Shown here: piece after piece, positions 26,587-31,176 of the stretch
Layout of the letters: each line of letters starts with the position of its first letter
Position numbering within the stretch: the stretch's first letter is position 1
From: Botryllus schlosseri
Taxonomy: Eukaryota
Reading direction: 5' to 3'
DNA: 64,000 bases
NCBI GenBank assembly: GCA_051294905.1
Contig: CM119376.1
Span: 29,016,001-29,080,000, forward strand
Translations under genes and position numbers: made by a program
The notes under the pieces: model-generated
Databases searched by the model: none
Told to the model about the DNA's origin: nothing
Seen by the model: the letters and a program-made list of their open reading frames with translations, nothing else

Positions 26587-29500
26587 TTACCGTGAACGCT
26601 CCGATGCACTTCCTCTGGGGCTTGGAGTTCTTTGTGGAAAATTGTCCCGCACTGGTGATGGGGATCTTGATAGTCGTCTGAAACAGTAATAATAATCATG
26701 CACAATCAGGGGTGGTCCGAATAATCATTCGTTAGTAATCATCCAGTAGTAGTGATTTCAAATTCTACGTGTAGTTTTGCCTATAAAAAGTCAAGTAGAA
26801 GTAGTAAAAACCATAATCGCTTCAGTAGATCCCTAATCCTTGATTTAGAGGCAACATTTTGCCACTATTTGCCTGTCCTGGAAGCTCAGTCTTGATTTGA
26901 AGGCAACATTTTCGTATTATGTACCAGGTACATTGTACTTATCTTAGAGGCTAAAACTGTGGTTTGTAACAGGGGTTCACGGAGCCAGTTGAAGGGGTCT
27001 GCGTGAGATCAAGAACCACCGTCCTAGAACGCTAAATTATAAAAGGAACCCACCTTTCCGGAGTTCTGCTACGCGCCGCCCTTCCGTTTTGCGGCGAATG
27101 ATAGCTCGGCCTGCGCCTTTCCCTCTCGGCGGTTCCCCCTCGTCTGGGAGAGAACGACCTGCTCCTGGACCTCCTGTACTGGCGGCGGGGCGGGCTGTGC
27201 CGTCTCTCCGGGGTGCGGCTGCGCGACCGGCTGTAGCTCCTGCGTCTGCGCGGGCTGCGACTTAACGAGCGTCTTCTCGGGCTGCGGCTGTACGACCTTC
27301 GGCGATATCTCCTGAACGTATGCTTCAAAGTTGCAAATCAGGTACCGGCGATAACAAAATACACACTCACCTTGGCGGGGATCCTCGTTCTTTACCACGC
27401 ATCTGGTTCGGCGCTACAAAAACAAGATACGCACGCTAGTAATCAGAGTCTGTCAAAATAATCCGCGTCGACACTCAAGTAGGCCTGGAAGTAATGCGCT
27501 AAATTTACATCCAATTTGAAGTAAAATAGCTATTCTGAAGACATGTCCAAACTATTTCGAGTGGAATTAGCAAATGAAGGTATGAAAAGTAATGAAGAGC
27601 ACAGTACCAGTCAGCAAAAAAACCTTTACATCAAAAGTCTGCAAAAGTTCATAAGCTTATCGTTCCCTACAGAGACATCGATTGTCATCACAGCCACAAC
27701 GCTCATAGTACGTTATAAGCCACTGTATGACTAGAATTTACTGCGACACCATTTCTCAGCGTGCCTAACGCTGCTTTACAGCTTCATGAATAGCAAGGTC
27801 TGTGAAATCGCAATACTTTTCATTTTCACAACATTTTGACGGTTGGAACTGGATTGGTGGCTACGCGAATGGTGATGATGGAAGAAAAACATGTCTTGTC
27901 TTTGTTGGAGAAGGGCGGTTTCTATCATAAGTGATGCAAGCCAATCTCAAAACTACTTTAAATTTGCAGAATGGTAGGCGCAAAAAGTAAATAGATTTGC
28001 TTAAAAGACTATTAAGTACAAGTGGAATAACCTTAACACAAAATCTCTCAAATTAGTGCAGGCAAGTGGGAAAAATCTACACGATTACTCTAAAAAGTAC
28101 TGTTACTGACAACCTCGATTACTAATTCTAGTTATCACCAGGGTTGTAACCAAGTCACAAGTCAATCTCAGATTTATAGATTCGACTCGACTATTTTCAA
28201 TTCACCACGGAGTCGAGTCGTCTAGTACAGGGTCGAGTCCGAGTCAGTGTGTTGACTCGAGTCTGAGTCCAAGTCATTACGTTTACTGTTCAGTTCAGTT
28301 CAACCCACTGTTTTCAACTCTGCTCGAGTGATAAAGAATGACTTGCATTTATAATATAGTAATTTTCCTCAGTTTCTGGCTCTACTTTCAAGTATCAGGA
28401 CTAAATACCAATAATGTGGTAACTTCACTATTCCCAGAAGTTACAATGAAATTACGTCTTGGTCGTCCTAGTCTCGAGTCCTATGACTTGGTTCAAGTCG
28501 ATACAAAAATCGCGACTCGAGACATTACAACCCTAGTTTCCACATAATTATTATACTTACTTTTTCTGTCTCCGGCAGCAAACTGGACCTCTATGCTTCG
28601 TCCTCCGACCCACTTTCTATCCATACCATAGAGAGCGTCCTCGGCGTCACGAACGTCTTCGAATGTACGATCCAGATAGCCGGCTAAGGATAATCTGCTC
28701 AAACCGGATTCTAGCTACGGGATTTCAGGAAACGACGAAAAGGGCAAAGGAGAGAGGGGTCGGAAAAGAATAAAAACTAAATAACTCTCGACATATCGAG
28801 AGCGAAAACAGATCCGTGCCAACTTCATACCGAGCTTTAGTTAGCCACAGAAAGACATGTAGTCGAAGCCTTTAACTTTGCAAAAACTCTTTCCGCAATC
28901 TTTGCTCTTTCTTTTACTTTAGCAACTCCTCTTTACACTTTAACCTCTTAACTTTGTGCGCTTTAACTTTTAATCGCTTTATCTTTAAAGTCTTTGCCTT
29001 CAAAGATGGGAATTCGGTTCAAATTTTACATTCAAATAACTCGTTCTCGAGTGCTGCGTGCATAAAGTAAGATATTTTTTCGTGCCAATCATGCTGTGCT
29101 CGGGAAAAATCACTAACACTCATTACGGCGCCAGAACAGTATGAAAGATGTGGAACGTTCAAATATGTACCATTTATGCAACCACACAGAATATAATATC
29201 AGTTTTACACCAGATAAGGGTAATTTGATATTTTTGAAACAGCTATTTCCAAACACTTTGTGGCAATGCTGCGGATCTAATGCTGCTTTCTAATACATAA
29301 TTCATATGCTGCGATTGACCAATCGAGATTTCAAGGCATCCACAGTGGAAATAGCACCGAAACTAGGATTTTTGTTGATACCTTCAAGAAATATACATAT
29401 AATCAAACCTTGGTTTACTGGATATCTGCTAGAAAGATATACCAGTTTCTGTTATCATTGCTTCAGTTTTTAAAGCAATATGCACCTGAAAGCGTAATTT

Positions 29501-31176
29501 TGAATGGCCAAAGAGATCATTTATCTACATCATCAAAACTCACAACACTAGTCATGTGATTGGCACGAAAAATGATGTATCAAATTGATATCCTCACCAA
29601 AAACACTTTATTATCTTTGCAAACCGCCACTACGTTGGACTTTTGGCTTTGTCCTCGAAACCAATTATTGCATACAAACGGCTAAGAAGCATTTTAGGCT
29701 TGGAATCTTTGCTTTTTCCAAAGCTTTCCCTTTTATCTAAGACGATACAACAAGTCAAATAACGAAATGCACATTTTGAAAAGGATATTGTATGTAGGCG
29801 AAGCCGCGTGGGGCTCGCGTGTAATAATCAAGCGGGACATACACGTCGCTGACTGGGCCATATCTCGTGAATTCTCGGCGAAGATCTTCAGATCTGAACA
29901 ATAAAAAAACTTGGCGATGCACAGCAAGGTTGCATTTTGCTCTACACTTCGTGTCAACTTTGCAAACCTTCACATTCTTAGTGTTAAATGCATACTGGGA
30001 CACAAGTTCTTTTCAGTACTGATGGCAAAGAACCAGCAACCCATACTGGAAACAGTGGTTGCGTTCGGCGATAAGTTGCGTGGCAGATGGGTCTCTTGCA
30101 GGTTGCCAGTGAATTCGGCCCTCCGAGAATATTGTATTAAAATATATTACCTACCGTTAACATGAATTAATTACATAATTATACTATTAAGTGATTTGGA
30201 TGTCAGGGTATGCGTAGATCGTGTAATCGCGGGAGATAGCGCAGATATTCACGGGGCCGAATTCACCGATGGCTGAATTTACTCGGCAGATTCGGCCCTC
30301 GGAGAATTTAGTACAAAAATATATTACCAACTATCAATGTGAATTAATTACATAATTATATTATTATCAAGTGATTTGGAGGTTAGGGGTTAGGATTAGG
30401 GTTTGGAAGGGTTAGGGTTAAGGTTAGGTAATGTTATTGTAACTGTAATTGTTACCCCGGCCCTGGCCGAATTTACAGAGGGCCGAGGTGACCTGTGGCC
30501 GAATTTACTGGAAACCCTGGAAACAGTGGTTGCGTTTGGCAGTAAATTGCGTGGCACTGGCAGATCGTTCTCTTGCATAGTATAATTAAATAAACGTGAT
30601 GGCCCGAGTGATGTTACCAAAAATTCCACTCTGGCCAACAGCTATGTGAAATTGGACCTGTAGGACTTATATCTATGGGTCCGGTTGAAAGCTCGTCATT
30701 CTTGACAGTTGATAGGCCTATAAGTTAGTTTTGTTATGAAGATATTTTGGAATGATTTCAAATCAAATTTTGCAGTCATCCTGATTAGAAATTGGACAAA
30801 TTGACTGATAAAAGATAGAGCCAAAACACAGACCATCACCTGTTTGGGTACTATGACAACATAATTGTGTAACACCATTTCACTGCATCACTGGAAATAC
30901 AGACAAATCGTTATAACCTTGACTTAACAAGGTTTCAATAATAATGTCCTACTTGGCACATTTCGATTCGCAGACACGACATACCGCGTATTTACATTAC
31001 ATGCCTCGAAATCTACTGCGAACGTCGTAACAACGTAGATTTTGGTGTTGCGCATGAAATGTTGTATTCGCATGATATAACCGGTACAGTAACTAATAGT
31101 TTCGACTTCATGCTTACCTGACAGTTTCGCTGATATTACGAATGAACAGCGACACGTTTGGTCGTCCTCTCGACAT
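26587..31176 (-). CDS. SRSF10: SRSF10/SRSF12-like SR splicing factor (RRM + RS domain), 6 exons, ~219 aa
   Basis: Exons 31118-31176, 29789-29893, 28561-28664, 27371-27413, 27054-27311, 26587-26677 total 660 nt in frame: [20 protein letters not shown]|[35 protein letters not shown]|[34 protein letters not shown]|TPNQMRGKE...RS/RSP repeats. This is close to the vertebrate SRSF10 RRM ([46 protein letters not shown]...DRKTPNQM). The last exon and stop are less certain. Confidence 0.92.
28139..28535 (+). mobile_element. GACTCGAGTC-family hAT MITE in SRSF10 intron 3
   Basis: TIR CAGGGTTGTAA / TTACAACCCTA; TSD gttatcac / gtttccac. Further partial copies at ~48030-48110, 52992-53310 and 59570-59717. 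Confidence 0.8.
28665..29788 (-). other. U12-type (minor spliceosome) AT-AC intron, intron 2 of the SRSF10-like gene
   Basis: 5' end CA|ATATCCTTTT matches the U12 donor consensus. Branch-like TCCTTAGC at 28683-28690. 3' end ..CGTAC|A. Splicing at these sites restores FAYIQ|FEDVRD in frame. Confidence 0.9.
30040..30590. repeat. Composite repeat with duplicated segments and a TTAGGG-like tract in SRSF10 intron 1
   Basis: Direct repeats at 30050-30200, 30290-30380 and 30520-30580; GAATTCGGCC/GGCCGAATT inverted motifs; gttaggggttaggattagggtttggaagggttagggttaaggttagg at 30381-30428. Confidence 0.6.

What the first reader, a model, noticed from the sequence alone, without database searches (positions are those of the whole stretch)
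28665..29788. AT-AC minor intron at the position known from vertebrate SRSF10
The donor ATATCCTTTT, branch TCCTTAGC (one change from the TCCTTAAC consensus) and AC acceptor are all visible, and only this splicing restores the RRM (FAYIQ|FEDV). GT-AG gene predictors would mis-model the gene. It implies a working minor spliceosome in this genome, which matters because some tunicates have reduced or lost U12 introns.
Basis: partly seen in the sequence, partly recalled or inferred. Interest (0 to 1): 0.7.

Follow-up and report, generated by a model that had tools for sequence, protein, structure and literature searches.

The report
Ancient minor-spliceosome intron in sea-squirt SRSF10
A sea-squirt splicing-factor gene (SRSF10) carries a rare AT-AC "minor" intron at the same codon as in frogs, sea urchins, brachiopods, horseshoe crabs and Hydra, so it is a real but expected survivor of a very old, already known intron.

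Summary
On the minus strand lies a 7-exon, 231-aa SRSF10-like gene. Its second intron (29788 down to 28665, 1124 nt) begins ATATCCTTTT. It has the branch box TCCTTAGC 20 nt before its end and ends in AC. It splits the Q codon inside RNP1 (RGFAYIQ|FEDV).

None of 76 in-frame GT/GC-AG pairings restores the RRM. A family HMM prefers the AT-AC product by 14 bits.

I fetched SRSF10/12 loci from Xenopus, a sea urchin, Lingula, Hydra and a horseshoe crab. All have a U12-type intron at the same codon and phase. In addition, 71 of 96 family representatives read "Q-YP" through an ATATCC donor there.

So this is the tunicate copy of an ancient, known U12 intron. It is a new member of a known kind and of low surprise, because ascidians are known to keep the minor spliceosome.

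No transcript and no minor snRNA could be examined: none is in the window, and no same-species protein is in the collections.

The intron also holds a statistically unusual AAAG-rich cluster and a pyrimidine tract with AG sites. These may mirror the vertebrate Srsf10 autoregulatory exon; this is unproven.

The scan had noted this same stretch once more (s1-258692) and two other U12 candidates elsewhere in this genome.

The parts
31118..31176 (-). Exon 1 of the SRSF10-like gene (ATG at 31176; [19 protein letters not shown] + AG), GT donor at 31117
   Evidence: aligns to the N-terminus of vertebrate SRSF10
29789..29893 (-). Exon 2 ([35 protein letters not shown] + CA), first half of the RRM up to RNP1
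   Evidence: Pfam RRM_1 profile positions 13-44, E 8e-6
28665..29788 (-). Intron 2: U12-type AT-AC intron, 1124 nt, phase 2, inside the Q codon of RNP1
   Evidence: same codon and phase as the introns in L001-L004 and L006
29779..29788 (-). Minor 5' splice site ATATCCTTTT (full match to the U12 consensus /ATATCCTTT)
28683..28690 (-). Branch-site box TCCTTAGC (consensus TCCTTAAC); its single A is at 28685, 20 nt before the intron end
   Evidence: lies inside the -55..-5 branch region that intronIC scores (PMC7367187)
28665..28666 (-). Terminal AC of the intron; the first AC or AG after the branch A
28561..28664 (-). Exon 3 (A + [34 protein letters not shown] + A), second half of the RRM; GT donor at 28560
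   Evidence: Pfam RRM_1 profile positions 46-69
27371..27413 (-). Exon 4 ([14 protein letters not shown] linker, conserved in SRSF10/12)
27054..27311 (-). Exon 5, RS domain
26591..26677 (-). Exon 6, RS/SP-rich
26486..26525 (-). Exon 7 with the TGA stop (model; the 3' exons are less certain than exons 1-4)
29755..29757 (-). First in-frame stop (TGA) if the minor donor is read through; it would truncate the protein after RNP1 (..[15 protein letters not shown])
29767..29772 (-). Weak GT donor candidate AAT|GTGCAT, 16 nt downstream of the minor donor. Better GTGAG cores lie at 29597-29592 (TTG|GTGAGG) and 29543-29538 (GTT|GTGAGT)
   Evidence: use not shown
28870..28995 (-). AAAG-rich purine cluster inside the intron: 15 AAAG in 126 nt, 71% purine, with AAAGAC/AAAGAT/AAAGAG units. 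It follows a possible acceptor ..ccatctttgaag| at 28998 and precedes a possible donor CG|GTATGA at 28830
   Evidence: only such cluster on either strand of the window; 0 of 2000 shuffles reach it
28716..28790 (-). Pyrimidine-rich tract (73% over 75 nt; 82% in the best 60 nt), followed by four AG dinucleotides (last intron base if used as acceptor: 28715, 28711, 28695, 28684), just upstream of and overlapping the U12 branch box
   Evidence: function inferred only

Best explanation
The stretch 29788-28665 (minus strand) is a U12-dependent (minor-spliceosome) AT-AC intron. It is the second intron of the sea squirt's SRSF10/SRSF12-type SR-protein gene.

Inferred mechanism: U11 pairs with the ATATCCTTT donor. 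U12 pairs with ATCCTTAGC, with A 28685 bulged as the branch point and the G forming a G-U wobble in place of the usual A-U. The first AC 20 nt downstream is the acceptor. Excision joins CA|A into a glutamine codon and rebuilds the RNP1 strand RGFAYIQF, giving an intact RRM.

The intron is inherited, not new. It sits at the same nucleotide of the same codon in a vertebrate, an echinoderm, a brachiopod, a chelicerate and a cnidarian.

Shown: sequence signals, reading-frame logic, orthology of position.

Inferred: actual removal by the minor spliceosome in this animal.
For: Gene model: seven exons give one open 231-aa frame. All other introns are GT-AG.

Homology:
- Exons 2 and 3 abut in the Pfam RRM_1 profile.
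- They also abut in an alignment with vertebrate SRSF10.
- The RRM plus linker is 76-79% identical to fish proteins named SRSF10 by NCBI/UniRef.

Splice signals: the donor matches the 9-nt U12 consensus fully. A branch box lies 20 nt from the end, and no other AC or AG lies between it and the end.

Alternatives: none of 76 in-frame GT/GC-AG pairings gives a gap-free RRM. The family HMM gives 166.7 bits for the AT-AC product against 152.3 for the best alternative.

Orthologous introns, all CA|intron|N:
- Xenopus tropicalis: ATATCCTTTC...CCTTAAC(10 nt)AC
- Diadema: ATATCCTTGA...TTCCTTGAC(16 nt)AC
- Lingula: ATATCCTTGT...TCCTTAAC(10 nt)AC
- Hydra: ATATCCTTTT...TCTTTAAC(9 nt)AC
- Tachypleus: ATATCCTTTA...CCTTAAC(10 nt)AA

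Read-through: 71 of 96 family representatives continue 'Q-YP..', which is a read-through of ATATCC at this codon.

Literature: mammalian Srsf10 uses an AT-AC minor intron from E2 to E4 (PMC7244321). Ciona was a reference species for U12DB.
Against: No RNA evidence. No same-species protein or transcript turned up in three protein searches, an exact look-up and a junction scan of metagenome contigs.

No minor snRNA gene lies in the window, and the rest of the genome could not be scanned.

The branch box differs from the consensus at one position (TCCTTAGC). It lies 20 nt from the 3' end, at the long end of the range seen in the orthologues, whose branch box ends 9-16 nt before the terminal dinucleotide.

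An unusually strong pyrimidine tract with AG sites lies just upstream. A competing U2-type 3' site is therefore possible.
Confidence: 0.9

Rival explanations
1. The coding mRNA uses an ordinary GT-AG intron. The weak donor AAT|GTGCAT (29772) would join the acceptor after the pyrimidine tract (cccgtag|, 28715). That keeps the frame and RNP1 (RGFAYIQY) and inserts about 22 residues ([21 protein letters not shown]) in the beta3-alpha2 loop.
For: The pairing is in frame without a stop. It scores only 14 bits below the AT-AC product. A strong pyrimidine tract precedes that AG.
Against: The donor lacks both -1G and +5G. No homologue among more than 350 fetched has an insertion there. The ATATCCTTT, branch box and AC would then be conserved for nothing, although five other phyla keep them at this very codon.
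Confidence: 0.04
2. It is an AT-AC intron, but it is removed by the major (U2-type) spliceosome, like the AT-AC intron reported elsewhere in this genome.
For: U2-type AT-AC introns exist. A pyrimidine tract lies near the 3' end.
Against: From general knowledge, U2-type AT-AC introns lack the ATATCCTT donor and the TCCTTAAC-type branch box; both are present here. The pyrimidine tract lies upstream of the branch box, not between it and the 3' end.
Confidence: 0.03
3. The gene copy is dead or the match is fortuitous, so the intron signals are relics that are no longer used.
For: No transcript or annotated protein of this species was found.
Against: Seven exons keep one open frame with good splice sites. 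The RRM is 76-79% identical to vertebrate SRSF10 with no frameshift or stop. The collections seem to lack this genome altogether: 10 of 10 window ORFs are absent. The missing protein therefore says little.
Confidence: 0.02

Closest known systems
Minor (U12-type, AT-AC) intron between exons 2 and 4 of mammalian Srsf10 (Meinke et al. 2020, eLife, PMC7244321)
   Same: Same gene family, same intron class and same terminal dinucleotides. As verified here on Xenopus tropicalis SRSF10 (L002), it has the same codon (Q of RGFAY[VI]Q|FEDV) and the same phase. Reading through the donor gives a premature stop.
   Different: In vertebrates a strong GT donor follows the minor donor within about 29 nt (Xenopus GAG|GTGAGA). 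The internal exon 3 carries a GA-rich enhancer, a poly(A) site and its own GTATCC site. Here the nearest GT (+16) is weak, and good GTGAG cores come only at +192 and +246. No internal GTATCC site follows the purine cluster. Use of any internal exon is unproven.
Orthologous SRSF10/12 introns in Diadema setosum, Lingula anatina, Hydra vulgaris and Tachypleus tridentatus
   Same: ATATCCTT donor after CA, a TCCTTAAC-type branch box near the 3' end, AC (AA in Tachypleus) before the F codon, phase 2.
   Different: Intron length ranges from 833 to 9751 nt. In these species 9-16 nt separate the end of the branch box from the terminal dinucleotide, against 18 nt here (20 nt from the branch A to the intron end). 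None shows an AAAG cluster as dense as the ascidian one. The sponge Oopsacas copy has no intron at this site.
U2-type AT-AC introns
   Same: The same terminal dinucleotides.
   Different: They lack the ATATCCTT donor and the U12 branch box, both of which are present here.

Membership tests
U12-type (minor-spliceosome) intron, AT-AC subtype | 5' splice site /[AG]TATCCTT | tested here: met
   ATATCCTTTT at 29788-29779
U12-type (minor-spliceosome) intron, AT-AC subtype | Branch box resembling TTCCTTAAC with an A, close to the 3' end (intronIC scores -55..-5) | tested here: met
   ATCCTTAGC at 28691-28683, with A 28685 lying 20 nt before the end. It has one departure from the consensus (A to G), which would still allow a G-U pair with U12 (inference)
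U12-type (minor-spliceosome) intron, AT-AC subtype | AT...AC termini, with the acceptor being the first usable dinucleotide after the branch | tested here: met
   No AG and no other AC in the 20 nt after the branch A
U12-type (minor-spliceosome) intron, AT-AC subtype | No polypyrimidine tract between branch site and 3' splice site | tested here: met
   10 of the 18 nt between the branch A and the terminal AC are pyrimidines (my count on the sequence). A strong tract does lie upstream of the branch box (28790-28716), which is atypical
U12-type (minor-spliceosome) intron, AT-AC subtype | Position shared with accepted U12 introns in orthologous genes | tested here: met
   Same codon and phase in Xenopus, Diadema, Lingula, Hydra and Tachypleus. 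71 of 96 representatives read through ATATCC there
U12-type (minor-spliceosome) intron, AT-AC subtype | Excision depends on U11/U12/U4atac/U6atac, and those snRNAs are present in the genome | not testable with these tools
   The window has no Rfam hit, and only the window is available. The literature says ascidians keep the minor spliceosome while larvaceans lost it (PMC13326754)
SRSF10/SRSF12 subfamily of SR proteins | Single N-terminal RRM followed by the GDRKTPxQM linker and RS-rich domains | tested here: met
   Pfam RRM_1 on exons 2 and 3. [15 protein letters not shown] and 126 residues of RS/SP-rich tail in the model
SRSF10/SRSF12 subfamily of SR proteins | Closest relatives are proteins named SRSF10/12 | tested here: met
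   76-79% identity over residues 6-104 to fish proteins that NCBI/UniRef name SRSF10. Names are as given by the sources
Srsf10 minor/major splice-site autoregulatory switch (Meinke 2020) | A competing major GT donor just downstream of the minor donor, with a premature stop between them | tested here: inconclusive
   Stop TGA at +32. The GT at +16 is weak (AAT|GTGCAT). GTGAGG lies at +192 and GTGAGT at +246. Xenopus, Diadema and Lingula have good donors at +14 to +29
Srsf10 minor/major splice-site autoregulatory switch (Meinke 2020) | An internal exon with a GA-rich, SRSF10-dependent enhancer | tested here: inconclusive
   The AAAG cluster at 28995-28870 is highly non-random and resembles the reported SRSF10 motifs AAAGACAAA and AGAGAV (PMC8522700). 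Exon use and SRSF10 binding are not testable. The sequence match to the Xenopus region is only marginal (10 of 200 shuffles reach it)
Srsf10 minor/major splice-site autoregulatory switch (Meinke 2020) | Isoform ratio responds to SRSF10 and to minor-spliceosome levels | not testable with these tools
   Needs experiments

The most novel reading that the evidence does not exclude
Several elements inside this intron may together form an ascidian counterpart of the vertebrate Srsf10 autoregulatory exon 3:
- the AAAG-rich cluster (28995-28870), with a possible acceptor before it and a GT after it;
- the strong pyrimidine tract with AG sites just before the U12 branch box;
- the GT donors downstream of the minor donor.

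If so, the circuit in which SRSF10 and the minor spliceosome compete to set SR-protein levels would predate vertebrates and be at least olfactorean in age.
Probability: 0.35. Interest if true: 0.55.

Novelty: new member of a known kind. Interest (0 to 1): 0.3.

Why it matters
It gives a correct gene model for a splicing regulator that GT-AG-only predictors break.

It adds an ascidian to the lineages that keep this very old U12 intron. Tunicates are reported to have lost much of their minor-intron complement, and their larvacean branch lost the minor spliceosome altogether. Retention here therefore suggests that this intron is under selection. A plausible reason is that, as in mammals, it ties SRSF10 output to minor-spliceosome activity.

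The practical value is mainly for annotation, and as a marker intron for asking whether a given tunicate genome still has minor splicing.

Tried and rejected
Same-species transcripts or proteins: none found.
- Two profile searches seeded with the window's exons returned only other taxa. A local simulation put a same-species protein near the top of such a search at about 159 bits.
- A search with the exon-2 ORF found two unrelated short proteins.
- An exact look-up of 10 window ORFs found none in the collection.
- A scan of metagenome contigs for the 32-nt spliced junction found nothing.
The spliced 231-aa model has no reference, so I did not type it into any tool.

Minor snRNAs: Rfam found nothing in the window at gathering threshold. 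Within 26-32 kb there was only a sub-threshold miRNA match.

The other three ATATCCTT sites (13950, 43103, 47022) have no coding context and no branch box. I treat them as chance.

The AAAG cluster is not a tandem repeat (TRF none) and is not part of the one interspersed-repeat fragment in the intron (29100-29266).

Sequence-level conservation of the cluster with Xenopus rests on a 16-nt match (TTAAAGATAAAGC.AT) that 10 of 200 shuffles reach. I do not count it as evidence.

Pfam found nothing for the nine longest window ORFs, so the species could not be identified that way.
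Full report
**What is there.** The finding lies on the minus strand. Reading the reverse complement gives an exon that ends ...CGC GGC TTC GCC TAC ATA CA, followed by ATATCCTTTT (29788-29779). 1124 nt further on comes ...ATTATCCTTAGCCGGCTATCTGGATCGTAC (ending at 28665), followed by A TTC GAA GAC GTT CGT GAC GCC GAG GAC GCT. Joining CA to A makes CAA (Q), so the protein reads [18 protein letters not shown].

I found the first exon by a motif search ([22 protein letters not shown] at 31176) and the downstream exons by eye. I then assembled them. The result is seven exons, 696 nt and one open frame of 231 aa. It has an N-terminal RRM, the linker [15 protein letters not shown] and an RS/SP-rich tail. 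Every other intron is GT-AG with a normal acceptor. The finding's coordinates are the exact first and last bases of intron 2.

**Is it more than chance?** The octamer ATATCCTT is not rare. It occurs 4 times in 64 kb against 2.6 expected, and 26 of 100 shuffles give at least 4. The other three copies have no open frame before them and no branch-like box within 6 kb.

The signal is in the context.
- Pfam RRM_1 aligns exon 2 to profile positions 13-44 and exon 3 to positions 46-69. Exactly the split codon is missing.
- The same is seen against vertebrate SRSF10.
- I enumerated every GT or GC donor from 29880 to 29691 against every AG from 28800 to 28576 that keeps the frame open. There are 76 combinations, and all of them insert or delete residues.
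It scores the AT-AC product at 166.7 bits and the best GT/GC-AG product at 152.3.
- After the branch A (28685), the 20 remaining nucleotides contain no AG and only the terminal AC. The annotated acceptor is therefore the first one available, as expected for U12-type 3' site choice.

**What gene it is.** A phmmer search of 1.84 billion representatives with the 34-aa exon-2 peptide gave 799 hits. The full-length ones are named SRSF10 or SRSF12 by NCBI and UniRef. Over residues 6-104 the model is 76-79% identical to fish SRSF10. Earlier notes of this scan call the genome a sea squirt; I did not verify the species.

**Is the position the known one?** Meinke et al. 2020 (PMC7244321) describe mammalian Srsf10 exon 2 as carrying an upstream minor AT donor that is spliced to exon 4 (AC). 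It also carries a downstream major GT donor that is spliced to a non-coding exon 3 with a GA-rich, SRSF10-dependent enhancer.

I fetched genomic loci for annotated orthologues and read the junctions.

| Species | Donor | Branch box and 3' end | Intron length |
|---|---|---|---|
| Xenopus tropicalis SRSF10 | CA\|ATATCCTTTC | CCTTAACttattggcAC\|G TTT GAA GAT | 3282 nt |
| Diadema setosum | CA\|ATATCCTTGA | TTCCTTGACcagaaaagattgccAC\|G TTT GAC | 9751 nt |
| Lingula anatina | CA\|ATATCCTTGT | TCCTTAACtcccatgcAC\|A TTT GAA | 833 nt |
| Hydra vulgaris | CA\|ATATCCTTTT | TCTTTAACttttgacAC\|A TTT GAA | 2326 nt |
| Tachypleus tridentatus | CA\|ATATCCTTTA | CCTTAACtcaagcgaAA\|G TTT GAA | 6633 nt (AT-AA) |

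The sponge Oopsacas minuta has no intron there.

A second, independent line comes from the family representatives. Among 96 that contain RGFAYxQ, 71 continue with 'YP', which is the translation of (A)TATCC. They are ORFs or gene models that ran straight through an ATATCC donor at this codon. The intron is therefore at least as old as the cnidarian-bilaterian ancestor, and the ascidian copy is its orthologue.

Several public models visibly patch the junction. Examples are ..[17 protein letters not shown] and ..IQ-YI-FEDV.

**Minor spliceosome in this genome.** This could not be tested directly. The window holds no Rfam family, and I have no access to the rest of the assembly.

The literature says the following.
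[quoted passage not shown] Nematodes and larvaceans are the only metazoan groups lacking all its snRNAs (PMC13326754).
- Ciona intestinalis served as a reference species for U12DB (PMC1635337).

An ascidian with a working minor spliceosome is thus expected, not surprising. Unchecked notes of this scan list two more U12 candidates (in a HECT domain and in hnRNP L RRM2) and a PDCD7 (U11/U12-59K) gene elsewhere in this genome.

**No RNA evidence.** I tried hard to find a transcript or protein of this species.
- A profile seeded with the window's exons on a vertebrate scaffold returned only vertebrates.
- The exon-2 ORF found two unrelated short proteins.
- A profile on a sponge scaffold would rank a same-species protein near the top at about 159 bits in my simulation. 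It returned sponges, cnidarians, molluscs and vertebrates, but no tunicate.
- None of ten window ORFs is in the collection.
- The 32-nt spliced junction is absent from metagenome contigs.

The collections seem to lack this genome. Absence of a protein therefore says nothing about expression.

- The intron holds 15 AAAG in 126 nt (28995-28870, 71% purine). It is the only such cluster on either strand of the window, and 0 of 2000 shuffles of the intron reach its density. It is not a tandem repeat.
- Its units (AAAGAC, AAAGAT, AAAGAG, AGAGGA) resemble the SRSF10 motifs quoted in PMC8522700: AAAGACAAA and AGAGAV.
- The cluster follows ..cccatctttgaag| and precedes CG|GTATGA.
- Downstream lies a pyrimidine tract (28790-28716, up to 82% in 60 nt, the highest of the six introns compared), and then four AGs just before and within the U12 branch box.
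- Read-through of the minor donor meets TGA at +32. GT candidates lie at +16 (weak), +192 and +246 (GTGAG cores).
- Xenopus shows the vertebrate layout: GAG|GTGAGA at +29, a purine-rich stretch at about 1630-1760 and GTATCCTACA at 1875. Diadema and Lingula have good GT donors at +23 and +14.

The ascidian thus has plausible parts of a comparable switch, but their arrangement differs. The one sequence match to Xenopus is marginal. Without RNA this remains a hypothesis, which I rate at about 0.35.

**Verdict.** This is a genuine U12-type AT-AC intron: the tunicate member of an ancient and already described intron of SRSF10. Its main value is for correct annotation and as a marker of retained minor splicing. 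It carries a testable side hypothesis about conserved autoregulation.

Noticed in passing
window 28870-28995 (minus strand): Dense AAAG/GA-rich cluster inside the U12 intron: 15 AAAG in 126 nt. It is unique in the window and 0 of 2000 shuffles reach its density. It is flanked by a possible AG acceptor (28998) and a GT donor (28830). It resembles published SRSF10 binding motifs.
   Followed up: partly
window 28716-28790 (minus strand): Strong pyrimidine tract followed by four AG dinucleotides immediately upstream of the U12 branch box. This is atypical for a U12 intron and stronger than in five orthologous introns. It could be a competing U2-type 3' splice region.
   Followed up: partly
window 29440-29431 and 29075-29066 (minus strand): Two further U12-donor-like motifs inside the intron: ATATCTTTCT and ATATCTTACT. 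Some family members seem to use ATATCTTT as their natural donor ('Q-YLF' read-throughs). No context suggests that the two motifs here are used.
   Followed up: no
window 29100-29266: Fragment of an interspersed repeat in the middle of the intron, 70-79% similar to 1767-1939 and 54823-54883.
   Followed up: no
window 30030-30590 (intron 1 of the gene): Two copies of a unit of about 250 nt (..gaaacagtggttgcgtt.ggc.. / ..ggccctc.gagaat.t.gta..aaatatattacc..) bracket a run of degenerate telomere-like repeats (ggttaggggttaggattagggtttggaagggttagggttaaggttagg, about 30383-30430). It looks like a repeat element or an interstitial telomere-like tract.
   Followed up: no
window 28150-28530 (intron 3 of the gene): Many short palindromic GACTCGAGTC / CGAGTCGA units; MITE-like or satellite-like sequence.
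   Followed up: no
L006 (Tachypleus tridentatus SRSF10-like locus), intron ending just before locus position 16496: The orthologous U12 intron ends in AA instead of AC (ATATCCTTTA...CCTTAACtcaagcgaAA|G), i.e. an AT-AA variant.
   Followed up: no
L005 (Oopsacas minuta SRSF10-like locus): The sponge gene is a single uninterrupted ORF with no intron at the RNP1 codon. This could be intron loss, a retrogene-like copy, or absence of the intron in that lineage.
   Followed up: no
proteins P0034, P0036, P0143 (public models of other species): Annotated SRSF10/12 proteins that patch the AT-AC junction with GT-AG surrogates: ..[17 protein letters not shown].., ..YPFFRWMI-TPNQMK.. and ..IQ-YI-FEDV...
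   Followed up: partly
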